IMG/VR virus record: IMGVR_UViG_3300031521_001337
Location: 62,001-126,000 of that record
Direction: 5' to 3' (one strand)
DNA length: 64,000 bases
Shown: in pieces, positions 6,160 to 59,909 of the stretch
Numbering within the stretch: the stretch's first letter is position 1
Layout: each line of letters begins with the position of its first letter
Translations under genes and position numbers: made by a program
The notes under the pieces: model-generated
Seen by the model: the letters and a program-made list of their open reading frames with translations, nothing else
What the model was told of the DNA's origin: nothing
Databases searched by the model: none

Positions 6160-6566
<407 letters not shown>

Positions 6567-6581
6567 TTAAATTGAAATTAA

Positions 6582-6950
6582 ATGGAAATAGTAGAAAATT
6601 TTAAGATGAAAGTTAGTAATCCTGATCAAATAAAAACTGTTCAGAGAATATTAAGTAGTATGGGTTTATTAGAGAAATTTTTATCTTCATTTTATTATGA
6701 AGGAATTTGTTATAGATATCATTCAAAACAAATGACTGGTTTTGGAAATACTAATGTACATTTTGATGATCATGAGCATAAAGAAATTACTTATGATGAA
6801 TTTATTGAAAAATATGATATTTTTAATGTTTCAACTAAAAATGTTATAATTACTACTGATATCATGTTTAAATTCATTGAATATTACATGGATCACCTTA
6901 ATGATGAAAAAACGCCACAAGAACTATTTAAAGATTGGAAAAATGATTGA
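6582..6950 (+). CDS. paralog array 1, member 1
   Basis: ENFKM...VQRIL...EITYDEF.EKY...FIEYYMDHLNDE. Confidence 0.8.
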   Translation: MEIVENFKMKVSNPDQIKTVQRILSSMGLLEKFLSSFYYEGICYRYHSKQMTGFGNTNVHFDDHEHKEITYDEFIEKYDIFNVSTKNVIITTDIMFKFIEYYMDHLNDEKTPQELFKDWKND

Positions 6951-7338
6951 AAGTTTTAAAATTAAAATTGCAGATGAAAGAGAACATAAAATAGTTCAAG
7001 AAACTTTGTTTTCTAATGGAGCTAAATGGAGAGAAGGTCAAGAAACAGTTTTATTTGGACCTAATCCAAATATAAATTGGAATGGACTTGAATATAATTC
7101 TGTAACTAAAAAAATTGGAGGATTTACTGATATAACTTCTACATCATCGTTTAATAGACATGATAAAAATGAAATATCATTTGCAGATTTTTGTAGTAAA
7201 TATGTAACTGACTCTATTCATTCAGAAAAAAATAAATATGTTTTGTTTGTACAATATTGTATGAACCATTTAAATGATGAAAAAACATTTGAAGAATTAT
7301 ATGATGAATATATATTAAATCTGAAAAATGATAAATGA
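6943..7338 (+). CDS. paralog array 1, member 2
   Basis: MIESFKI...VQETLFSNGAKW...EISFADF...YCMNHLNDE; ATG at 6943. Confidence 0.8.
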   Translation: MIESFKIKIADEREHKIVQETLFSNGAKWREGQETVLFGPNPNINWNGLEYNSVTKKIGGFTDITSTSSFNRHDKNEISFADFCSKYVTDSIHSEKNKYVLFVQYCMNHLNDEKTFEELYDEYILNLKNDK

Positions 7339-7720
7339 GAATTTTAAAATAAGAGTAAATAATCCAGAAGAGTCCATATTTGTTCAAAAACTATTATTTC
7401 AAAATGGTTCAAAATGGAGAAATGGTAAATCAGAAGTTAATCTTGTTGATAGCCAAGGTAGTTCGTGGAAAGGGTTATATCATTATTTAAATAATACTAT
7501 AACTGGTGATGCAACTATTGGAGGATATTTTCATAATCATGATAATCCTGAAATAACATTAGAAGAATTTAAAATTAGATATTTTGGTAAAGGTGAAACA
7601 AGTAGACAAACTTGTATTGATTTTGCTAAATATTGTATGGATCATTTAAATGATGAATTAACAATAGAACAATTATTTGATAACTTTATAAAACCAAAAA
7701 ATGGAAATAAAACCTTTTAA
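7328..7720 (+). CDS. paralog array 1, member 3
   Basis: ENFKI...VQKLLFQNGSKW...EITLEEF...YCMDHLNDE. Confidence 0.8.
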   Translation: MINENFKIRVNNPEESIFVQKLLFQNGSKWRNGKSEVNLVDSQGSSWKGLYHYLNNTITGDATIGGYFHNHDNPEITLEEFKIRYFGKGETSRQTCIDFAKYCMDHLNDELTIEQLFDNFIKPKNGNKTF

Positions 7721-8072
7721 AATATATCATCTTGATAATGAACAATCTAAAATTGTTCAAAATATGGTATTTCGCGATGGTGGTGGATGGGGAAGCAGCT
7801 TAGATAAAGATTTAAGAATGTTTAGTCCTAGTAATACTATTACTTTATGTATGACATCTAAAGGTATGTTAAGATCCGGTGTAGTAGTTACCCAAAGTAC
7901 ATTTGATGGTCTTGAAGGAGAAGAATTAACATATGATCAATTTAAAGAAAAATATGCTAATACTTTACGTATATCTAGAGAGAAAATCCTTGCATTTGCT
8001 GAATATTACACTAACAATATAGTTGGCGCATCATCTCCAGATGATGTATTAACTGACTTCTTAAAATTATGA
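7701..8072 (+). CDS. paralog array 1, member 4
   Basis: KPFKI...VQNMVFRDGGGW...ELTYDQF...FAEYY. Confidence 0.8.
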   Translation: MEIKPFKIYHLDNEQSKIVQNMVFRDGGGWGSSLDKDLRMFSPSNTITLCMTSKGMLRSGVVVTQSTFDGLEGEELTYDQFKEKYANTLRISREKILAFAEYYTNNIVGASSPDDVLTDFLKL

Positions 8073-8437
8073 TAATCGAAAATTTTAAAATACATCATCT
8101 TACTAGGGATCAATTTAAATTTGTTCAAGAAATAATATTTAAAAATAATTGTTCATGGGTAGGATCACACACAACTAACATTAAAGAACATTCAGATAGT
8201 AATGATATTTCTATTGTAGTAAATAATCTTGAGGCGAGATCTGGATCAGATATTGTACAAGGTATATTTGATCAACTTAGAGGAGAAGAAATTACTTTTG
8301 AACAATTTAAAGAATTATATTTTATTAATATTCCTAAATTTACTAAACAACAAATGTTTGATTTTGCGGAATTTTATGCAAATAATTCAGACACAATATT
8401 AAATGATGAATTGCTAAAACAATTTTTAAATCCATAA
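8069..8437 (+). CDS. paralog array 1, member 5
   Basis: ENFKI...VQEIIFKNNCSW...EITFEQF...FAEFY. Confidence 0.8.
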   Translation: MIIENFKIHHLTRDQFKFVQEIIFKNNCSWVGSHTTNIKEHSDSNDISIVVNNLEARSGSDIVQGIFDQLRGEEITFEQFKELYFINIPKFTKQQMFDFAEFYANNSDTILNDELLKQFLNP

Positions 8438-9336
8438 TGAACGAAACTCAAACAGAAATTGGAGTTGTTATCGGGAGATTTCAGCTACACGAATTGCATA
8501 CTGAACATATCAAGTTAATTGAACATGTTCTTGCAAACCACGAAAAGGTAATTTTATTCTTAGGAACTACATCTGCAATGGGTACTCAAAGAAATCCATT
8601 GGATTTTATTACCCGTAAAGCTATGATCGAAGCACATTTTAGAAATAGAATATCTTCAATTGTACCACTTGCTGATTGTAAATCCAATGAAGTATGGTCT
8701 ACTCAAATTCGTACTAAAGTAAGAGATATTTTTCCATCTGGAACAGTTACTCTTTATGGAGGTAAAGATTCGTTTATTCCATATTATACTGGAAATTGGA
8801 AAACAACTGAACTTGAACCAGAAGTCTATATATCTGCAACAGATATTAGAAAGAAAGTTGCCGGACGTATATTAGCATCATCTGATTTCAGAGCTGGTAT
8901 AATTTATTCGGTTTTTTCACAATATCCCCGCTCATTTTCAACAGTTGATGTTGCAATCTTTAATGAAAAAGGTGAAATTCTATTAGGTCAAAAACCTGAT
9001 GAAAAAGAATGGTGTTTTGTTGGAGGATTTGTTGATGTTACTGATGAATCCGATGAAGCTGCTGCTCGTCGTGAAGGTAGAGAAGAAACAGGTCTTGAAC
9101 TTGCTGACTTTGAATTCGTTTGTTCAAAACGTGTAGAAGATTGGCGATATAAGAATTCACATGATGCTAAAATTATGACGCATTTATACAAATGTAAATA
9201 TACTTTTGGTAGTCCACAACCTCAAGATGATATTGCTGCCTTAAAATGGTTCCCATACGGTCCTGAGCTAGACAAAATCTTGGTTGGAGAACATAAAAAG
9301 TTATTAGTTGACTTATTAAAAAATACTGAAAAATGA
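8437..9336 (+). CDS. bifunctional NMN adenylyltransferase / Nudix ADP-ribose pyrophosphatase (NadM-Nudix)
   Basis: GRFQ...H..H nucleotidyltransferase motif, RNPLDF..R, ISATDIR; Nudix box GGFVD...AAARREGREETGL. Confidence 0.92.
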   Translation: MNETQTEIGVVIGRFQLHELHTEHIKLIEHVLANHEKVILFLGTTSAMGTQRNPLDFITRKAMIEAHFRNRISSIVPLADCKSNEVWSTQIRTKVRDIFPSGTVTLYGGKDSFIPYYTGNWKTTELEPEVYISATDIRKKVAGRILASSDFRAGIIYSVFSQYPRSFSTVDVAIFNEKGEILLGQKPDEKEWCFVGGFVDVTDESDEAAARREGREETGLELADFEFVCSKRVEDWRYKNSHDAKIMTHLYKCKYTFGSPQPQDDIAALKWFPYGPELDKILVGEHKKLLVDLLKNTEK

Positions 9337-10246: not shown

Positions 10247-11677
10247 ATGCCAAAATTTCATCCAACAACCGCAACTGATGCATATAAATTTGTGCATTGG
10301 ACGCAACGTCCTTCGGGATTGACAAGACTTATGTCTTATGGAGAACCTCGTGTAGGAGGTCAACACTCTCATATTGTTTTCTATGGTATACAATATTTCA
10401 TAAAAGAATATTTTATGACTGTTGTCACTAATGAAGATATTGAACGTGGTGCTCGTAGAAGTTTAAATACTTTTGGTAACCCTGGTTATTTCCCTCAAGA
10501 AATTTGGGAAAAAGTTCGCGATTTAGGATATTATCCTTTAGAAATCAAAGCTGTAAAAGAAGGAACTGTTGTTCCAACTGGTAATGTTTGTTATACAATT
10601 GAAGCTACTGAAGAGTGGTTTGCACCAATGGTTAGTCACTTCGAACCTTGGTTAATGTGGAATTGGTATCCAGTTGCCGTTGCTACTCGTATGTATAATA
10701 TTCATAAAGGTATTACTCCATCATTCAAAATCTCTACTAACAACGCTATGTTGGATTATGTAGTTAATGATTTTGGATTAAGAGGTGCTCAAGGTCATGA
10801 AGCTGCTTGTTTAGGTGGTTCTGCTGCTTTAATCTTTTCTGATGGTTCTGATAATGTTCCAGCAATGGAATTTATTGAAGACTATTACGGAGATGCAACC
10901 GTAGGAAAATCTGTATGGGCAACTGAACACTCAGTAGCAACTGTATTTGGTCCTGGTCAGGGAGAATTTGATTATGTCAATGCTCAATTTGATCGCGCTG
11001 GTGACGATGCTATGGTATCAATTGTTATTGATTCTTATGATGATACTAATTTCATTAAAAATGTTATTGGTTCAGAAGCAATCAAACAACGTATTATCGC
11101 ACGTCCAGGTAGAACTATTTTACGTCCGGATTCTGGTGTTCCGTTAACAAATATGATTAAGTATTCTGAAATGCTTGGTAATATTTTTGGATATCACTTA
11201 AATGAAGTAGATTACAGAGTAATTAATCATAATGTAGGCTTAATTCAAGGAGATGGTATGAATGAAAATTCAATCGTTGATATTTATTCAGAATACATTA
11301 AAACTGGTTGGTCTTGTGAAAACTTTGCGGTTGGTTCAGGTGGTGGTTTGCTTGTTGAAGGATTGACCAGAGATACAGATCGTTGGGCAGTAAAATGCTG
11401 TTTCGCTGTAATTGATGGAGAATCAAAAGATATTCGTAAATCTCCTAAAGGAGATATGACTAAAGCTTCAAAAGCTGGTATTTTGAAACTTCATAAAGCC
11501 GGATCAGAATTCATTACTATCGAAAGTTCTAAAGAACAATATGGTATTAATAATGGATATGCTGATGAACTTGAAATAGTTTATCGTAATGGTAAATTAA
11601 TGAGAGATCAACATTGGACAGAAATTCGCACTATTGCTAAGAGTTATCTTGAAGCCGATTTAAAAACAAGTAAATAA
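10247..11677 (+). CDS. nadV: nicotinamide phosphoribosyltransferase (NAMPT)
   Basis: TDAYK.H, DFGLRG, ATEHSV, VIDSYD, RPDSG, IQGDG, GSGGGLL, RDT motifs. Confidence 0.95.
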   Translation: MPKFHPTTATDAYKFVHWTQRPSGLTRLMSYGEPRVGGQHSHIVFYGIQYFIKEYFMTVVTNEDIERGARRSLNTFGNPGYFPQEIWEKVRDLGYYPLEIKAVKEGTVVPTGNVCYTIEATEEWFAPMVSHFEPWLMWNWYPVAVATRMYNIHKGITPSFKISTNNAMLDYVVNDFGLRGAQGHEAACLGGSAALIFSDGSDNVPAMEFIEDYYGDATVGKSVWATEHSVATVFGPGQGEFDYVNAQFDRAGDDAMVSIVIDSYDDTNFIKNVIGSEAIKQRIIARPGRTILRPDSGVPLTNMIKYSEMLGNIFGYHLNEVDYRVINHNVGLIQGDGMNENSIVDIYSEYIKTGWSCENFAVGSGGGLLVEGLTRDTDRWAVKCCFAVIDGESKDIRKSPKGDMTKASKAGILKLHKAGSEFITIESSKEQYGINNGYADELEIVYRNGKLMRDQHWTEIRTIAKSYLEADLKTSK

Positions 11678-16526: not shown

Positions 16527-17006
16527 ATGGAAAGAAGTAAAAATGAATTATTAGCAATTGAAAAAGGATATAAAATAACTATAAATGGTGATATTTTAAA
16601 TCCTAAAGAAAAAATTTTAACAGGAACTATTTATAATAAAAATTATAAAAAATTTAATATTAGATTAAATGAAAAACATATTCCAGTTAAAGTACATAGA
16701 TTACAAGCATATCAAAAATTTGGAGAAATTATTTTTAACGAAGATATAGTAGTTAGACATTTAGATGGTAACGGATTAAATAATTCTTGGGATAATATTG
16801 AAATTGGATCATATAGTGATAATATGATGGATAAACCTAAAGAAGAAAGAATTAGAATTGCATCTAATGCTAATAAAAAATATTCTGATGAATTAGTTTT
16901 AGAAATTAAAGCATACCGAAATTTAGGGCATACTTATAAAGAAATTATGGAAAAATATAATATTAGTAGTAAAGGAACCATTAGTAATATTATTAATAAT
17001 AGATAA
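16527..17006 (+). CDS. HNH homing endonuclease with C-terminal HTH
   Basis: KVHRL.AY...VVRHLDGNGLNN..DNIEIGSYSDN; ATG at 16527 preferred over GTG 16425, which overlaps structured RNA. Confidence 0.85.
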   Translation: MERSKNELLAIEKGYKITINGDILNPKEKILTGTIYNKNYKKFNIRLNEKHIPVKVHRLQAYQKFGEIIFNEDIVVRHLDGNGLNNSWDNIEIGSYSDNMMDKPKEERIRIASNANKKYSDELVLEIKAYRNLGHTYKEIMEKYNISSKGTISNIINNR

Positions 17007-19874: not shown

Positions 19875-20618
19875 ATGGAAAACAAATATTCAAAAGAAAA
19901 TTTAGAAAAAATTGTAAAAGAAAGTTATTCTTTTGCAGATGTGTGTAGATATTATGGGTTGCCTTTAACTGCTGGTAATTATGAAACAATTCAAACTAAG
20001 ATAAAAAAACATCAAATTAGCACAATTCATTTTAAAAGAAATTCTTCAAATGAAACTAAGAATGTGTACACTTTAGATACAATCTTTTGTAAAGATTCAG
20101 CATATACACAAACAAGTAAGTTAAGAGATAAATTATTAAAAAATAATCTAAAAGAACATAAATGTGAATGTTGTGATAATACTAAATGAATGGGAGAACC
20201 TATTCCATTAGAAACACACCACATAGATGGTATTAAAACTAATAATGAATTAAATAATCTTAAATTATTATGTCCAAACTGTCATGCTTTTACTGATAAT
20301 TATAAAGGTAAAAATGTTAAAGATAAAGTTATAGATGCATTATATTGTAATTCTTGTGGTAATACTATAACAAGTTCTTCTGTAAGTGGTTTATGTTTAA
20401 GTTGTTCTGCTAAACGAATAGCTAATGATTTTTACGATGAACTTGGTATAACTCGTGAATATTTAAAAACTTTAGTTCGCACAGAAACATTTATTAATAT
20501 TGGTAAATTATACAATAGATCAGATAATGCTATTAGAAAATGGTGTAAACATTTTAATATACCTTCTTCAAAGAAAGAAATAAATAGTTTGTCTGATGAT
20601 GAATGGGATAAAATATAA
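19875..20618 (+). CDS. HNH homing endonuclease with one in-frame TGA (20187..20189)
   Basis: ORFs 19839..20189 and 20190..20618 are one frame: CECCDNTK*MGEPIPLETHHIDG...N...NLKLLCPNCH. Confidence 0.8.
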
Positions 20619-20861: not shown

Positions 20862-20950
20862 GGGGGTGTGGCGAAATTGGTAGCCGCAGCTAAATATAGG
20901 TTAGACCATAGCGGTCGTGAGACATGGGGGTTCGAAGCCCTCCGCCCCCA
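20862..20950 (+). ncRNA. tRNA-Leu-like RNA with a distorted, 7-nt-expanded anticodon arm
   Basis: Leu-type acceptor, D, variable and T arms; anticodon region GCTA-AATATAGGTTAGACCA-TAGC. Confidence 0.7.
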
Positions 20951-20956
20951 CTAAAT

Positions 20957-21035
20957 TCCCCAATGGCGTAATTGGCAGACGCGTATTCTTCGGAATATGT
21001 CGAGAGACATGTGGGTTCGAGTCCTCCTTGGGGGA
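20957..21035 (+). ncRNA. class II tRNA-like RNA with a UUCG tetraloop in place of the anticodon loop
   Basis: TATTC-TTCG-GAATA; D-arm GCG..CGC; variable arm GTC-GAGA-GAC; acceptor TCCCCAA/TTGGGGG. Confidence 0.7.
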
Positions 21036-21041
21036 GCAAAT

Positions 21042-21122
21042 ATGTCAGTATACAAGCGGTTAAAGTAGTTAGTCTCCAAAACTAATCCGAAAGGTTCGTG
21101 GGTTCAAATCCTACCTGATGTG
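21042..21122 (+). tRNA. tRNA-Trp(CCA) with long variable arm
   Basis: TTAGT-CTCCAAA-ACTAA; variable arm CC-GAAA-GG; G73. Confidence 0.85.
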
Positions 21123-21127
21123 CAAAT

Positions 21128-22061: not shown

Positions 22062-23006
22062 ATGAAGATATTATTTATTGGTAATGGAATTTTTGGAGTT
22101 CCAGCATTAAAAAAATTACATGAAATTTATCAAGTTACAGTTATAACAACACCACCACGACGTTTCGGTAGAGTAGTACAAAATACACCTATTTATATTG
22201 CTGGTAAAGCTTTAGGTTGTTTAGTATATACTGCTAATGATATTAATGAACTTGAACATCGTATAATTAGTACTGATTTTGATTTAATTGTTGTTGCATC
22301 TTATGGACAAATAATTAAAATGAAAATACTTGATTCTGCTAAATATGGTGCAATTAATATTCATGGTTCATTATTACCGAAGTATAGAGGTGCTTCTTGT
22401 ATTCAAGCTGCTATTTTGAATAGAGATTCTGAAACAGGAGTTACATTTATTAAAATGAATGCTGCTGTAGATGCTGGAAGTATTATTACTCAACGTAAAA
22501 TGTATCTACCTGTAGGAATGGGATATATTATGCTTCTTGATCAATTATCAAACTTAGCTGCTGAAAATATTCTTCTAACAATCACTAAATATACTCGTGG
22601 AGTTATTTTAAGACCACAGATAGAAAGTGAAGCTACATATTGTTGTAAAATAACTAAAGATGATTGTTTACTTGATTTTAATAAAAATGTTGATGATGTA
22701 TATGCAAAAATGAAGGCATATGAATCGAATCACGGAGTATTCTTTTATTTACCAGATAACAATACTGAAGTTAAAATTAAAGATGCATGTATGTATACTG
22801 GACGTGTTAAAGGTGATTTCTTAGATGGAGAATTAATTTGTGTTGAAAATAATAAACTTTTTATAAATTGTAATAAAAGTAGTCTTCAGATTGTTTCATT
22901 ACAATTACCTAATAAAAAGGTTATGTCAGCTAGAGATTTTATTAATGGTCATAAGAAGTTAATCACACAATTTGCTGATTTACAAATAATTGTACATAAT
23001 GTATGA
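22062..23006 (+). CDS. fmt: methionyl-tRNA formyltransferase
   Basis: KILFIG...FG..AL..L, TTP.RR.GR, VASYG.I, INIHGSLLPKYRGA..IQ, ETGVT, VDAG.I; ~314 aa. Confidence 0.92.
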   Translation: MKILFIGNGIFGVPALKKLHEIYQVTVITTPPRRFGRVVQNTPIYIAGKALGCLVYTANDINELEHRIISTDFDLIVVASYGQIIKMKILDSAKYGAINIHGSLLPKYRGASCIQAAILNRDSETGVTFIKMNAAVDAGSIITQRKMYLPVGMGYIMLLDQLSNLAAENILLTITKYTRGVILRPQIESEATYCCKITKDDCLLDFNKNVDDVYAKMKAYESNHGVFFYLPDNNTEVKIKDACMYTGRVKGDFLDGELICVENNKLFINCNKSSLQIVSLQLPNKKVMSARDFINGHKKLITQFADLQIIVHNV

Positions 23007-26074: not shown

Positions 26075-26422
26075 ATGAGATTAGTAACAGTAAATTTAGA
26101 TATAGATCCTGAATCTGGACTTGAAGAAGAATTTGATGATGTACCACAATCAGAATGGTGATTTTGGACATGTTATTACAAAAGTGAACCCGATGGACTT
26201 TGTTGTGTATATGGTTATCAAGATCCAGATCAACCACATCAGTTAATATATAGTCAACAAATTGAAGTTTGTGGTCGATATGTTAGAGGTTTTGGTTCAT
26301 GTTGTTATGATCATGAATTATTTGCATTAACTAATAATACAGATAATTACGAATTTATATGTTGGTTTGAAAAACTAAGTTATGAAATTAGAAAAGAATT
26401 AATGATAATATTACCTTTTTAA
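26075..26422 (+). CDS. paralog of 25786..26064 with one in-frame TGA (26159..26161); absent from the ORF track
   Basis: MRLVTV...QSEW*FWTCYY...LCCVYG...FICWFEKLSYEIRKELMIILPF*. Confidence 0.7.
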
Positions 26423-49799: not shown

Positions 49800-50813
49800 A
49801 TGTACGAATTAGATATAGCACCAAAGATAACTAAAGAACTTTTACTCACAAAATACTCCCAAGAAACGTTCATGGAACATTACTTGGGAGTATCTATTAA
49901 AAAAGGACTATTCAAGAGTCCACCCACTTTGAGGGTTGATCATACACCAACATGTAGCTTTTATAAGGATAAAAAAGGTACTCTATTTTTTAAAGACTTT
50001 GCTGGACCAAGTTTCGACTTTCTCGGCGCAGTAATGCATATTTTTCAATGTAATTATTATAAAGCTTTAAGAATTATTGCTAATGATTTTGGAATTATAA
50101 AAGTAGATAATATGCAAATGAATCCTCCACTTATACCATATTCAGGTTCAATCTTACAGGAAACTGAAAAGGCGAACATTCAAGTTGAAGTCAAGGACTT
50201 TAGCCGAAAAGAATTGGATTGGTGGAATTCATTTGGTGTATCAATCGTAACCCTTAAAAAGTATAAGGTGTTTTCTATAAAATCTGTTTTCTTAAATGGA
50301 GTTTATTTTTCATCTTCTACAGAATCTTGTCCTATTTATGGATATTATGGTGGAAATACTTCAGATGGTGATGAGTTGTGGCGATTATATATGCCAACTA
50401 AAAGAAACTATAGGTTTCTTAGCAATTGGAAATCAACGATGATTCAAGGTGCCAAACAACTATCAAAATCTGGAGATTTCATTGTAATAACTAAATCACT
50501 TAAAGACGTAATGGCTTTAGATGAATTTGGTATAACAGCAGTAGCCCCTAATAGTGAAAATATATTCTTAACTCAAGCTCAGTATGAAAAATTACAGCTT
50601 AAATTTAAAGATATTTATTTGTTATACGATAGGGATCTACCGGGTGTTAAAGCTGCCAATAAAATTAGGAAAGCCTTTCCAGGTGTAAAAGTACTCTTAG
50701 TTCCAAAAGTAAAAGACTTTACTGATTATGTCAAAAAGTATGGAACATTAAAAACATTTAATTTAATAGAAGAATGGCTAGAAAAAAGAAAGACGAATCT
50801 ACCACTTGAGTAG
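49800..50813 (+). CDS. DNA primase (TOPRIM)
   Basis: D..P.CSFY, FKDF, IQG, ITKS.KD, YDRD..G, KDFTDY. Confidence 0.8.
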   Translation: MYELDIAPKITKELLLTKYSQETFMEHYLGVSIKKGLFKSPPTLRVDHTPTCSFYKDKKGTLFFKDFAGPSFDFLGAVMHIFQCNYYKALRIIANDFGIIKVDNMQMNPPLIPYSGSILQETEKANIQVEVKDFSRKELDWWNSFGVSIVTLKKYKVFSIKSVFLNGVYFSSSTESCPIYGYYGGNTSDGDELWRLYMPTKRNYRFLSNWKSTMIQGAKQLSKSGDFIVITKSLKDVMALDEFGITAVAPNSENIFLTQAQYEKLQLKFKDIYLLYDRDLPGVKAANKIRKAFPGVKVLLVPKVKDFTDYVKKYGTLKTFNLIEEWLEKRKTNLPLE

Positions 50814-50821
50814 AAGGAGAG

Positions 50822-51223
50822 GTGACGGTTGAAAAACCGAAGAAGAAAAGGAGTTCGGGTTATTCCAAACAAAAAGGTAATACTTACGAAAGACAAATTG
50901 TAAATGAGCTAAAAGAATTAACAGGTAATGAGAACATATGTACTGCACGAAGTGAATCTAAGAAATTAGATGATATGAAAATTGATATTTCAGATCCCGA
51001 CAATGCTATTCCTTGTTATATTCAGACTAAGAAAACACAAAGTACCCCAAGCGTTAAGAAAATTAATGCAGAAGTTGGACTAAAGGATAAACCTTTGTGT
51101 ATTATATGGAATATACAGGAAAAGAAAGAAGGAAATACAAATATTACTTCAAACGGTGAGTACGCTATTATTCCAAAAGAATTTTTTTATGAATTATTAA
51201 AAAGTCATAATGATAAAAGGTAA
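50822..51223 (+). CDS. Holliday junction resolvase-like PD-(D/E)XK nuclease
   Basis: KG..YER.I..EL, D..KIDI, IQ.K. Confidence 0.75.
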   Translation: MTVEKPKKKRSSGYSKQKGNTYERQIVNELKELTGNENICTARSESKKLDDMKIDISDPDNAIPCYIQTKKTQSTPSVKKINAEVGLKDKPLCIIWNIQEKKEGNTNITSNGEYAIIPKEFFYELLKSHNDKR

Positions 51224-56572: not shown

Positions 56573-57862
56573 ATGGAAGAAGAAAAAATATATCAACCTC
56601 ATGAATTGTATTTTTCAATTTATAAAGATCCAGAAGAAGATTCATCTGATTATTGGGCTGTAGGTTGGACAGTTTGTTTTACTACAATTGAATGGTTTAA
56701 TGAAGAACACTGTCAATCTGATGATTTAGGTGGACATAATGTAAATAACGAAGCTTTAATTAAAGCTGGATTATGTGATACTGAATTATTAGAATCAGTA
56801 TTTGAAGTAGAAATAGGTGATACAAAAGAAGAAATTCATCAAAATTTATTAGATGCTGGATTTATTTTTAATGTCGAATTTGATAATTTTATGAATCAAT
56901 ACAGTTAATATGAAAAGACTTCCTAGTGATTTTACAAAAGAATTATGGGGAAAGCAAATGTTAGAAGATTTCAGGCCTGCTTCGGCAGAACCTGAAATCG
57001 AAGACATTTACAAACATAATTATATGGTAGTGTCTAATATGAGAATGAAAACTCTTAAAAAGACTATACCATTTTCTAAATGTGCAACAGATGGATTGAT
57101 TGAATTTTCTTATGGAGGTAAAACTTTTATGGGAATTCAAGAAGTTAAGTTTAAAAAAGCTTATACAGATTGGCAATTAAAACAACAATTAGTTCAAGCT
57201 TTAATGTATGAATGGATGTTTGAACAAGCCGAAGTTGAATATAAACTTAGTGTTTTTATATTAAATAGCGAATCATATTTTGCTTATGTGTATAATGATG
57301 AAATTCAACAACTTAAAAAAACTTTGTGGTCAATTTTTCCTGAAATAACCGAAACTCCTTGTAAAGCCTATAAAAATAAGCTTATTCAGGATGTTATCCG
57401 AAAGAAAGTTATTCCAATTAATAAATCACAAATTACAGATAATTATTCAATGCACGGAACAATCCGTGATATATGTAAACACTGTTTATAATGAAGTATT
57501 ATTTAATTAAAGAAACAACGTGGTTTTACGATCCCCACGGTACTCCAGATTTTGGAGGAGAAACAAAAGAAGTTATTGAGGATGATGAAGAATCAGGTAT
57601 AACAATTGATGGAACATATATTAGTGGATATCGTTATAATGATTATTTGGATTGTAAAGATGAAGAAATGGATTTATATTTTGATGATGATGATGAAACT
57701 GATTTTGAATATTATCTTAAACCTGATGATTATGACAAAGTTATGAAACTATCTGGTCAAGATGGTTATAATTGTGAAGAAACTGATTTTGAAATTAAAG
57801 AAATCTCCGAAGAACAATATAATAGATACAAAGAAATTATCAATGAATACAGTAAAATATAA
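56573..57862 (+). CDS. three hypothetical proteins (56573..56908 acidic; 56910..57491 with possible PD-(D/E)XK EVK motif; 57491..57862 very acidic)
   Basis: ORF track and composition. Confidence 0.6.
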
Positions 57863-58626: not shown

Positions 58627-58711
58627 TCATTATATTTTATAGTTTTTACATAATATAGTTTTTTCATAAAATTATTTTATTATTTTTGTATAAACTAAAA
58701 AATTATAAAAT

Positions 58712-59602
58712 ATGGGTAAAACATTAACAACACAAGAATTTATTGAGAAAGCAAAATTAGTTCATAATGAAAAATACGATTATTCTAAAGTTGATTATAA
58801 AAAATCATCTAAGAAAGTAATAATTGTATGTAAAGAACATGGTGAATTTGAACAAACTCCGAATATTCATTTAGATAATCATGGGTGTCCAGCTTGTTCT
58901 AAATTAAAAAAGCGAAACGATATTTCAAAAATTCCAAATATAAAATTATCTAATTATATTGTTTCAAATCCGATTGAACTTTCAGGAAAATTAGAAATAA
59001 TAGGATCTATTTATTTATTTATAAATCCTATAAATAATAAAAAATATATTGGAAAAACAATTATGAAATTAAGTAGTAGATTTTCTGCACATTTAAATAA
59101 ATCAAAACATTCTGATTACTATTTTTATAGATCCATCCGTAAATATGGATGAAATGTATTTGAAAAACATGTATTATATCAAACAGAAATAGTTGATAAC
59201 AATAAAGAAAATAAAAAATTAATAGATTCTATTATTTGTGGAAAAGAAATAGAATTTATTAATTTATTTGAATCAAATAATCCTAAATTTGGATATAATG
59301 AAACAAATGGAGGTGAAGGAACAGCTGGATGTAAATTTTCTAATAAAGTTAAAGAAAAAATGAGTAATGCTAGAAAAGGTAAAGGAAATTCAATGTATGG
59401 AAAAACATTAGATAAAAATCCTAGATCTATTCCAATTTTACAATTAGATTCTAATAATAATATAATAAAAAGATGGAGCTGTGCTGTTGAAATACATCAA
59501 GAATTAGGATACTCTATTAGTAGAATTAGAGATTGTTACAATAATAAATGTGAGATATATAAAAAATATAAATGGATAAAAGAAGAAAATTATGGAAAAT
59601 AA
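58712..59602 (+). CDS. GIY-YIG homing endonuclease (Zn-ribbon N-terminus, NUMOD3/HTH-like tail) with one in-frame TGA (59150..59152)
   Basis: CKEHG...GCPAC; SIY..IN..NNKKYIGKT; SIRKYG*NVFEK...E..FI...GYN...GG; frame continues into 59360..59602. Confidence 0.82.
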
Positions 59603-59909
59603 AATAAGATGTCCAAAATGTAGTTCAGATAAATTAACAGCAAACAAGAAAGGATTTAGTGGAGGAAAAGCTGTAATAGGTGGATTATTAACTGGTGGTA
59701 TTGGATTAACTGCTGGTTTTATTGGTAGTAATAAGATACAAATAACATGTATAAATTGTGGTCATATGTTTAAACCTGGACAAGGTATTTCTGAAAATGA
59801 ATTAACTGATGAAGAAATATTATCATCTAATTCATCTAATCAAGGATGTATGTATACTATGATTGGTATATTTGCATTAATTGTATTTATAACAATATTA
59901 TTTTTATAA
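59592..59909 (+). CDS. Zn-ribbon / Gly-zipper membrane protein
   Basis: CPKC...GKAVIGGLLTGGIGL.AG...CINCG; C-terminal TM segment. Confidence 0.7.
   Translation: MENKIRCPKCSSDKLTANKKGFSGGKAVIGGLLTGGIGLTAGFIGSNKIQITCINCGHMFKPGQGISENELTDEEILSSNSSNQGCMYTMIGIFALIVFITILFL

What the first reader, a model, noticed from the sequence alone, without database searches (positions are those of the whole stretch)
58712..59602. GIY-YIG endonuclease split by TGA in the KYGW motif
ORFs 58712..59152 and 59360..59602 are one reading frame. The TGA sits at SIRKYG*NVF, where GIY-YIG homing endonucleases commonly read KYGW..F, and the catalytic Glu and GYN..GG motifs lie downstream of it. Readthrough would therefore switch on an otherwise inactive nuclease, 32 kb from the tRNA island examples.
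Basis: partly seen in the sequence, partly recalled or inferred. Interest (0 to 1): 0.6.

Follow-up and report, generated by a model that had tools for sequence, protein, structure and literature searches.

The report
Homing nuclease gene using TGA as tryptophan
The "split" nuclease is one intact homing-endonuclease gene in a peat phage that reads TGA as tryptophan with its own suppressor tRNA, a known kind of phage code switch that probably delays nuclease production.

Summary
Window 58712..59602 is one frame, broken only by TGA at 59150-59152 in SIRKYG*NVF. That column is Trp in all 8 close homologs.

The cause is not a local readthrough device. The window lies in a 213-kb phage contig from peat metagenomes that reassigns TGA to Trp. 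Its minus-strand structural and packaging genes carry about 180 in-frame TGAs, which align with TGG-encoded Trp in standard-code terminases. The genome also encodes a canonical Trp-like tRNA with anticodon UCA.

The plus-strand early block holding the window uses TGG for Trp and still uses TGA as a true stop. The exceptions are a handful of genes, including two homing endonucleases: this GIY-YIG gene and an HNH gene at 19875..20618.

The gene is intact:
- dN/dS after the TGA is 0.21-0.54, about the same as before it.
- The catalytic Arg, Glu and Asn are present.
- The predicted fold matches I-TevI.

It is also mobile, because a close relative lacks exactly 58629..~59907.

Relatives encode the same Trp with TGA in three lineages and TGG in two. 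Full-length nuclease therefore needs the suppressor tRNA. Late gating is an inference, and Borges et al. already proposed it for an intron endonuclease in Agate phages. This is a new member of a known kind.

The parts
58712..59602 (+). Complete GIY-YIG homing-endonuclease gene: 296 aa when TGA is read as Trp, with a TAA stop
   Evidence: Pfam gives GIY-YIG, NUMOD3 and a weak DUF4379 match; PHROG hits are homing endonucleases. Full-length homologs are 51-66% identical.
59150..59152 (+). In-frame TGA (codon 147) decoded as Trp. Under the standard code the product stops here at 146 aa
   Evidence: W147 is invariant in A1. The codon is TGA in the window, L001, L002 and L005, and TGG in L003 and L006.
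58718..58918 (+). N-terminal DUF723/DUF4379-type treble-clef zinc-finger domain (aa 3-69). Homologs carry two copies; this gene has one
59003..59311 (+). GIY-YIG catalytic domain (aa 98-200) with Y101, Y112, R123, H127, E179 and N196
   Evidence: Pfam match. The columns are invariant in A1 and A3. The AlphaFold model's best PDB match is the I-TevI catalytic domain 1mk0 (TM 0.74).
59333..59599 (+). NUMOD3 motif (aa 208-233) plus a C-terminal strand-helix-helix DNA-binding module (aa 241-296)
   Evidence: Pfam NUMOD3 E=1.4e-7. Model secondary structure and weaker fold matches to I-HmuI and the I-TevI DNA-binding domain.
58629..59907 (+). 1.28-kb cassette (the nuclease gene plus the next small ORF) that is missing from a close relative
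   Evidence: L016 (88-98% nt identity in the flanks) joins window 58628 directly to about 59908. L018-L023 also lack the gene.
59592..59909 (+). 105-aa zinc-ribbon/hydrophobic ORF overlapping the nuclease gene's 3' end and inserted together with it
   Evidence: only weak zinc-ribbon matches.
19875..20618 (+). Second early-block homing endonuclease (HNH) with one in-frame TGA (20187-20189, codon 105) at an invariant Trp, between the CxxC and HH motifs
   Evidence: W105 is invariant in 17 homologs (A2).
21042..21123 (+). Phage tRNA-Trp(CCA) in the tRNA island. The tRNA(UCA) suppressor itself lies outside the window, at genome 30014-30087 on the minus strand
   Evidence: ARAGORN. Rfam tRNA scores 43.5 bits here and 62.9 bits for the UCA tRNA.

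Best explanation
The two ORFs are one intact, free-standing, mobile GIY-YIG homing-endonuclease gene of the I-TevI type. It sits in a phage contig of about 213 kb from peat that has reassigned TGA from stop to tryptophan. The phage encodes a canonical 74-nt tRNA with anticodon UCA and bacterial Trp identity features (A1-U72, G73, anticodon loop CU-UCA-AA). This tRNA, presumably charged by the host TrpRS, inserts Trp at codon 147 and at about 180 in-frame TGAs in the structural and packaging genes.

The plus-strand early block around the gene is written in the standard code: Trp is TGG, and TGA is used as a real stop. Early in infection, host RF2 would therefore terminate at codon 147. The resulting 146-aa fragment has the zinc finger and half of the GIY-YIG domain but lacks the catalytic Glu179 and Asn196. 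Full-length, active nuclease appears only once the suppressor tRNA is available.

Shown: gene integrity, Trp at the TGA, the genome-wide recoding, the suppressor tRNA gene, and the presence/absence polymorphism. Inferred: charging of the tRNA with Trp, the timing of its expression, that the truncated product is inactive, and that the delay is selected rather than incidental.
For: - Genome-wide recoding: coding density rises from 0.44-0.85 to 0.89-1.0 in genome 1-30 kb and 130-200 kb when TGA is read through, and is unchanged in the window's block.
- Codon counts: late minus-strand ORFs have 182 TGA vs 144 TGG. In the early block, 368 TGG, and TGA falls almost only at ORF ends.
- TGA means Trp: terminase TGA columns 275 and 396 are TGG-Trp in 5 of 5 standard-code homologs, column 269 in 3 of 5, and column 441 in the closest relative.
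- Suppressor tRNA(UCA); Rfam 62.9 bits.
- W147 is invariant in homologs. TGA and TGG interchange at that column across lineages.
- Purifying selection after the TGA (dN/dS 0.21-0.54) is about the same as before it (0.23-0.55).
- Catalytic residues are conserved and the fold matches I-TevI.
- Empty site in L016.
- TGA is a true stop in early genes: paralogs end at homologous positions with TGA or TAA, and there are ATGA stop/start overlaps.
- TGA is enriched in homing endonucleases. In this genome's early block, 2 TGA:6 TGG vs at most 6:360 (p=0.01). In L005, two endonucleases have 10:0 vs 0:7 in their neighbours (p=5e-5).
- Published precedent.
Against: - There are no expression, proteomic or tRNA-charging data. 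Every run that holds the stretch is a DNA run, so no RNA evidence is available.
- The phage has no RF1 or TrpRS gene, so it must rely on host factors.
- The host and its genetic code are unknown.
- One early-block HNH_3 gene (16527..17006) has no TGA, and relatives L003 and L006 use TGG throughout. The TGA is therefore not obligatory for this nuclease family.
- With only three Trp codons in the gene, a TGA at the first of them could be neutral drift in an AT-rich genome that tolerates TGA.
Confidence: 0.8

Rival explanations
1. Neutral consequence of recoding, not a regulatory device. The phage tolerates TGA as Trp once its suppressor is made, and AT mutational pressure drives TGG to TGA. Dispensable selfish genes such as homing endonucleases therefore accumulate TGA by drift or bring it in by transfer from recoded regions. 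The resulting delay in expression is incidental.
For: The same Trp is TGG in L003 and L006 and TGA in others, while L005 has all four Trp codons as TGA. The gene is dispensable: there is an empty site in L016 and a 28-bp frameshifting deletion in L001. The genome is 29.6% GC. Endonuclease genes inside the late blocks also carry TGA.
Against: The window and L002 (64% aa identity) both keep TGA at the first Trp, upstream of the catalytic Glu, and TGG at the two later Trp codons. In L005 the contrast of 10:0 in endonucleases vs 0:7 in adjacent genes is sharp. Borges et al. found a significant TGA preference in an Agate intron endonuclease.
Confidence: 0.35
2. Leaky readthrough without the suppressor. 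Host tRNA-Trp(CCA), or the phage's own tRNA-Trp(CCA) at 21042..21123, misreads UGA at a low level and gives a trickle of nuclease throughout infection. This is.
For: From general knowledge, not tested here: UGA is the leakiest stop and is near-cognate to tRNA-Trp. The TGA is followed by A.
Against: A dedicated tRNA(UCA) exists, and about 180 late-gene TGAs must be decoded efficiently. No conserved stimulatory structure is present: the hairpin at 59134-59151 is absent from homologs.
Confidence: 0.1
3. Decaying pseudogene: a nonsense mutation has killed the nuclease.
For: Homing endonuclease genes often decay. Variant L001 carries a truncating 28-bp deletion (window 59379-59406). The window's copy has lost one of the two N-terminal DUF723 repeats.
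Against: The TGA is shared by lineages only 61-64% identical. The downstream half is at least as conserved as the upstream half, with dN/dS 0.21-0.54. All catalytic residues are intact. The same codon is sense in about 53 other genes of this genome.
Confidence: 0.04
4. Selenocysteine codon, since ARAGORN labels the tRNA 'SeC'; or the host is a TGA=Trp organism, so there is no switch at all.
For: ARAGORN labels the tRNA as tRNA-SeC(tca). The host is unknown.
Against: The tRNA is 74 nt with an ordinary cloverleaf and no long variable arm. TGA columns align with Trp, not with Cys or Sec. About 150 early ORFs avoid in-frame TGA and at least 10 terminate with it. A TGA=Trp host would not impose that pattern.
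Confidence: 0.03

Closest known systems
TGA-to-Trp (code 4) stop-codon-recoded phages with suppressor tRNAs: the Agate, Jade and Sapphire clades of Borges et al. (bioRxiv 10.1101/2021.08.26.457843)
   Same: Late structural and packaging genes are written with in-frame TGA, and the replication/early block is in the standard code. The phage encodes a tRNA(UCA). The genome is about 200 kb, like Jade and Sapphire. TGA aligns with Trp in the terminase.
   Different: It comes from peat metagenomes, not animal or human gut. It has no RF1 or TrpRS 'code-change module'. Clade membership was not tested, because their sequences were not on hand. The nearest terminases are unnamed human-faecal phage contigs at 75-81% aa identity.
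Agate-phage group I intron endonuclease that prefers TGA over TGG (Borges et al.)
   Same: It is a homing endonuclease located among standard-code early genes and carries in-frame TGA. The same logic applies: no full-length nuclease until the code switch.
   Different: Here the genes are free-standing (intergenic), and Rfam finds no group I intron in the window. Two different nuclease families are involved (GIY-YIG and HNH). Each has a single TGA at an invariant Trp upstream of catalytic residues.
I-TevI, the GIY-YIG homing endonuclease of the phage T4 td intron
   Same: The catalytic-domain fold is the best PDB match (1mk0, TM 0.74, 29% identity). The GIY/YIG/Arg/Glu/Asn residues are present. 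A linker and C-terminal DNA-binding modules follow (NUMOD3, helix-turn-helix-like). From general knowledge, I-TevI synthesis is also held back until late infection, by mRNA structure and autorepression.
   Different: This gene has an extra N-terminal DUF723 zinc-finger domain. It is free-standing rather than intron-encoded. The delay would come from a reassigned stop codon, not from RBS sequestration. There is no sequence-level PDB hit.

Membership tests
GIY-YIG homing endonuclease (I-TevI-like) | GIY-YIG catalytic domain detected by a family profile | tested here: met
   Pfam PF01541 scores 25.5 bits against a cut-off of 22.6. The match ends at the TGA region (aa 98-150). PHROG homing-endonuclease families match at E=2.8e-19 and 9.9e-15.
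GIY-YIG homing endonuclease (I-TevI-like) | Catalytic residues: Tyr of GIY, Tyr of YIG, Arg, Glu, Asn | tested here: met
   Y101, Y112, R123, E179 and N196 are invariant in A1 and in the alignment with cultured-phage homologs, A3. The first motif reads SIY rather than GIY.
GIY-YIG homing endonuclease (I-TevI-like) | Alpha/beta GIY-YIG fold | tested here: met
   The AlphaFold model has mean pLDDT 75, and 80-90 in the catalytic domain. Its top Foldseek hits are the I-TevI catalytic domain 1mk0 and 1ln0 (probability 1.0, TM 0.69-0.77).
GIY-YIG homing endonuclease (I-TevI-like) | Mobility: presence/absence at a fixed site among close relatives | tested here: met
   L016 lacks exactly 58629..~59907. 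The gene is syntenic in L002, L003 and L005, and absent in L018-L023.
GIY-YIG homing endonuclease (I-TevI-like) | Site-specific DNA cleavage of the nuclease-less allele | not testable with these tools
   This needs a biochemical assay on the L016-type junction.
Stop-codon-recoded (TGA=Trp) phage | Many in-frame TGAs in otherwise intact genes, with coding density restored when TGA is read through | tested here: met
Stop-codon-recoded (TGA=Trp) phage | TGA columns align with Trp in standard-code homologs | tested here: met
   Terminase, GIY-YIG and HNH.
Stop-codon-recoded (TGA=Trp) phage | Phage-encoded suppressor tRNA for the reassigned codon | tested here: met
   tRNA(UCA) at genome 30014-30087 on the minus strand, with A1-U72 and G73. 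Rfam scores it 62.9 bits.
Stop-codon-recoded (TGA=Trp) phage | Early/replication genes compatible with the standard code, and a host that uses the standard code | tested here: inconclusive
   Early-block compatibility is shown. The host was not identified; a Bacteroidota-type promoter motif was not clearly enriched.
Stop-codon-recoded (TGA=Trp) phage | Trp actually incorporated at TGA (protein-level evidence) | not testable with these tools
   No proteomic data and no RNA runs that hold the locus.

The most novel reading that the evidence does not exclude
Homing endonucleases embedded in the standard-code early block of TGA-recoded phages may be selectively kept with a single 'gate' TGA. The gate sits at an invariant Trp upstream of their catalytic residues. 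It is seen in a GIY-YIG and an HNH enzyme here, and is conserved at the same Trp in a 64%-identical relative. Under this reading the phage's code switch acts as a translational timer or dose limiter, protecting replicating phage DNA from its own selfish nucleases until late infection. That would be a general, testable rule outside the gut and beyond intron-encoded enzymes.
Probability: 0.35. Interest if true: 0.55.

Novelty: new member of a known kind. Interest (0 to 1): 0.4.

Why it matters
The finding shows that an apparent broken nuclease gene is intact once the genome's own genetic code is recognised. Annotating this contig with table 11 would split or lose about 50 late genes and these endonucleases.

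It extends TGA-to-Trp phage recoding to a peat phage of about 200 kb. It also independently replicates the published idea that selfish nucleases sitting among early genes are held back by recoded stop codons, now for free-standing GIY-YIG and HNH genes.

The locus offers a compact experimental system: one TGA, a known empty-site target allele, and one tRNA. This system could test whether a code switch works as a translational timer.

Tried and rejected
- **Local readthrough signal.** A 7-bp hairpin at 59134-59151 ends in the TGA. It is absent from homologs L002 and L005, which also use TGA, so I rejected it as coincidental.
- **Sequence search of solved structures.** A search with the family profile found nothing. 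The fold search was needed to reach I-TevI.
- **Promoter clues.** Sigma-70-like sites are not above the shuffled expectation (28 vs 25.9). No 7- or 8-mers are enriched upstream of late vs early genes. The Bacteroidota -7 motif TAnnTTTG occurs upstream of both endonuclease genes, but it is only about 1.7-fold enriched in intergenic DNA and shows no strand bias. No conclusion on host or timing follows.
- **Code-change accessory genes.** RF1 (PF00472) and TrpRS (PF00579) are absent.
- **LAGLIDADG_3.** Absent from this genome.
- **RNA evidence.** No RNA run holds the locus. Four wastewater cDNA runs share only 6-11% of the sampled words and I did not pursue them.
- **+4 nucleotide context.** The base after TGA does not obviously differ between sense and stop TGAs in this AT-rich genome.
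- **Selenocysteine, assembly error and pseudogene readings.** All rejected; see the rival explanations.
- **Unused searches.** I did not use the large representative-protein search, the complex predictor or the Atlas searches, because the family scans and word search had already settled the identity.

Full report
**1. The observation**

Window 58712..59602 (+) is one reading frame of 296 sense codons. It is interrupted only by TGA at 59150-59152 (codon 147), in the context SIRKYG*NVFEK. Read with TGA as Trp, the protein (P0001) has these parts:
- a weak DUF4379/DUF723 treble-clef zinc finger (aa 3-69);
- a GIY-YIG domain (Pfam match 98-150, cut short at the TGA region);
- a NUMOD3 motif (aa 208-233).

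PHROG profiles call it a homing endonuclease.

The TGA is real. Contigs from four independent peat-metagenome runs cover it without a single difference. Three IMG/VR contigs carry the identical gene.

**2. Is the TGA at a Trp?**

The word search returned seven full-length homologs (51-66% identity) and one fragment. Trp is invariant at this column, as are Y101, Y112, R123, H127, E179 and G194-Y195-N196 (A1).

I fetched the DNA of the homologs to see which codon encodes that Trp:
- TGA in the window;
- TGA in the 98.7%-identical contig L001;
- TGA in L002 (64% aa identity), where the two later Trp codons are TGG, exactly as in the window;
- TGA in L005, where all four Trp codons are TGA;
- TGG in L003 and L006.

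TGA and TGG are thus used interchangeably for an invariant Trp.

In more distant homologs from cultured standard-code phages, the column is W in Lactobacillus phage Ld17, Bacillus phage Izhevsk and Clostridium phage FA67. It is K, V or F in three others (A3).

The half of the gene after the TGA is at least as conserved as the half before it: 61-72% vs 52-68% identity, and dN/dS 0.21-0.54 vs 0.23-0.55. So the downstream half is translated in frame.

**3. Why TGA is read as Trp: the genome**

The window is bases 62001-126000 of a single 213,486-bp virus contig with 29.6% GC. CheckV estimates the contig to be complete.

Reading TGA through raises ORF coverage from 0.44-0.85 to 0.89-1.0 in genome 1-30 kb and 130-200 kb. 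It changes nothing in the window's block.

The genome has two kinds of territory:

| Territory | Location | TGA vs TGG |
|---|---|---|
| Minus-strand ORFs: very large structural genes, terminase, portal | 1.6-34 kb and 130-207 kb | 80 ORFs, 182 TGA vs 144 TGG, 53 ORFs with at least one TGA |
| Plus-strand block | 34.7-130.4 kb | 153 ORFs, 368 TGG; TGA almost only at the extreme ends of read-through frames |

The TGAs at ORF ends in the plus-strand block are true stops or lie upstream of true starts.

The plus-strand block encodes a helicase, DNA ligase, dUTPase, NAD-salvage enzymes, a formyltransferase, 24 tRNAs and a tmRNA.

True-stop use of TGA in the early block is clear:
- paralogous genes at 6582-8437 end at homologous positions with TGA or TAA;
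- three TGA stops overlap the next ATG.

In the terminase large subunit, TGA columns 275 and 396 are TGG-Trp in five of five standard-code homologs. Column 269 is Trp in three of five, and column 441 is Trp in the closest relative.

ARAGORN finds a 74-nt tRNA with anticodon UCA at genome 30014-30087 on the minus strand. It sits at the head of the leftward recoded block, after about 4 kb of TGA-free genes. Its features are:
- an ordinary cloverleaf (Rfam tRNA, 62.9 bits);
- A1-U72, discriminator G73 and an anticodon loop CU-UCA-AA.

From general knowledge, these are the bacterial tRNA-Trp identity set with C34 changed to U.

The genome has no RF1 or TrpRS gene.

**4. What the gene is**

The AlphaFold model (mean pLDDT 75; catalytic domain 80-90) has the I-TevI catalytic domain as its best PDB match (1mk0, TM 0.74, probability 1.0). 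Weaker matches are to I-HmuI and the I-TevI DNA-binding domain. W147 lies between helix 137-145 and strand 151-157.

The gene is free-standing. Rfam finds no group I intron in the window.

The gene is also mobile:
- In L016, a relative 88-98% identical in the flanks, window 58628 is joined directly to about 59908 (…CCTAATC|TTAAAAATATGG…). The nuclease gene and the overlapping 105-aa zinc-ribbon ORF are therefore a 1.28-kb insertion.
- Six further relatives lack the gene.
- L002, L003 and L005 have it at the same place.
- One population variant (L001) has a 28-bp deletion (window 59379-59406) that truncates the DNA-binding part.

This is the usual life cycle of a selfish homing endonuclease gene.

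**5. How it most likely works**

Under the host's presumed standard code, RF2 stops translation at codon 147. The fragment has the zinc finger and the GIY, YIG and Arg elements but lacks Glu179 and Asn196. Once the phage tRNA(UCA) is made and charged, presumably by host TrpRS, the full 296-aa enzyme is produced.

The same holds for the HNH gene at 19875..20618. Its single TGA (codon 105) is at a Trp invariant in 17 homologs, and it lies between the CxxC motif and the catalytic HH motif.

Homing endonucleases are over-represented among the few early-block genes with an internal TGA:
- in this genome, 2 TGA:6 TGG in three endonuclease genes vs at most 6:360 elsewhere (Fisher p=0.01);
- in L005, two endonucleases use TGA 10:0 while four neighbouring genes use TGG 0:7 (p=5e-5);
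- in L002, whose late gene is also recoded (12 TGA:6 TGG), a LAGLIDADG-like gene and the GIY-YIG gene each carry a TGA;
- L003 shows no internal TGA in 26 genes, and its copy of the nuclease uses TGG.

The timing of suppressor expression, its charging, and whether the delay is adaptive remain inferences.

**6. Comparison with what is known**

Borges et al. (bioRxiv 10.1101/2021.08.26.457843) describe phages that recode TGA to Trp or TAG to Gln. These phages have suppressor tRNAs, late genes in the alternative code and early genes in the standard code.

For Agate phages they state that a group I intron endonuclease inserted in an early gene prefers TGA over TGG. [quoted passage not shown]

The present locus is therefore a further example of a described phenomenon. 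The differences are:
- a peat habitat, with at least 20 runs from different studies holding the stretch;
- free-standing rather than intron-encoded nucleases;
- two nuclease families;
- one TGA at an invariant Trp upstream of the catalytic residues;
- no RF1 or TrpRS gene.

The nearest terminases in the phage collection are unnamed human-faecal phage contigs (75-81% aa identity); all others are about 35%.

**7. Rivals**

- **Neutral drift or transfer.** This remains a serious alternative to adaptive gating, since the TGA is not obligatory in the family.
- **Leaky readthrough by tRNA-Trp(CCA).** This is unnecessary given the suppressor, and no conserved stimulatory structure exists.
- **Pseudogene, selenocysteine, assembly error, code-4 host.** Each is contradicted by the data cited above.

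**8. Verdict**

I rate it a new member of a known kind, of moderate interest.

Noticed in passing
window 19875-20618: HNH homing endonuclease with a single in-frame TGA (20187-20189) at a Trp invariant in 17 homologs, between the CxxC and HH motifs. It is the same pattern as the GIY-YIG gene.
   Followed up: yes
window 6160-6568: Phage-encoded tmRNA (Rfam 107 bits; ARAGORN tag peptide GNKTISFARTAFMAAA). This is notable in a phage that deliberately suppresses a stop codon.
   Followed up: partly
window 20862-21123: A run of odd long-variable-arm tRNA-like genes. 20862-20951 is called 'Tyr-ATA' by ARAGORN and has no Rfam hit. 20956-21037 has a UUCG-type 6- or 8-nt loop where the anticodon loop should be and also has no Rfam hit. 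21042-21123 is tRNA-Trp(CCA) with A1-U72/G73 but a long variable arm (Rfam 43.5 bits).
   Followed up: partly
window 26075-26422: A 115-aa ORF in the tRNA island with an internal TGA at codon 29 (…PQSEW*FWTC…). It has no family match and may be another recoded early-block gene.
   Followed up: partly
window 50774-51223: PDDEXK_15-like phage endonuclease ORF (weak Pfam match, below the family's curated cut-off). If it starts at ATG 50774 it has a TGA at codon 12; otherwise it starts at GTG 50810 just after the TGA. The start is ambiguous.
   Followed up: partly
window 22062-23006, 8437-9336, 10247-11677: A methionyl-tRNA-formyltransferase-like gene inside the tRNA island, and an NAD-salvage pair (NUDIX-domain protein, NAMPT-like).
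   Followed up: partly
window 56573-56909: The 111-aa ORF 56573..56908 is also absent from the close relative L016 (window 56572 joins 56910). This is a second clean indel near the nuclease cassette.
   Followed up: no
genome C1 1592-8180 and 206898-213486 (outside the window): A 6.6-kb direct repeat at 99.9% identity near the two contig ends. The first 1.6 kb of the contig is not repeated, so this is not a simple circular overlap. The true genome length is therefore uncertain (about 205-213 kb).
   Followed up: partly
L002 11398-12186: In the relative L002 the dUTPase gene is called in two pieces about 300 bp apart. This may be an intron or insertion, or a recoding or gene-calling artefact.
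   Followed up: no
genome C1 18779-21414, 171090-171380, 176808-177059, 199367-200050, 206565-206693 (outside the window): Many further GIY-YIG and HNH endonuclease genes lie inside the late blocks, several with in-frame TGA. This phage is unusually rich in homing endonucleases.
   Followed up: partly
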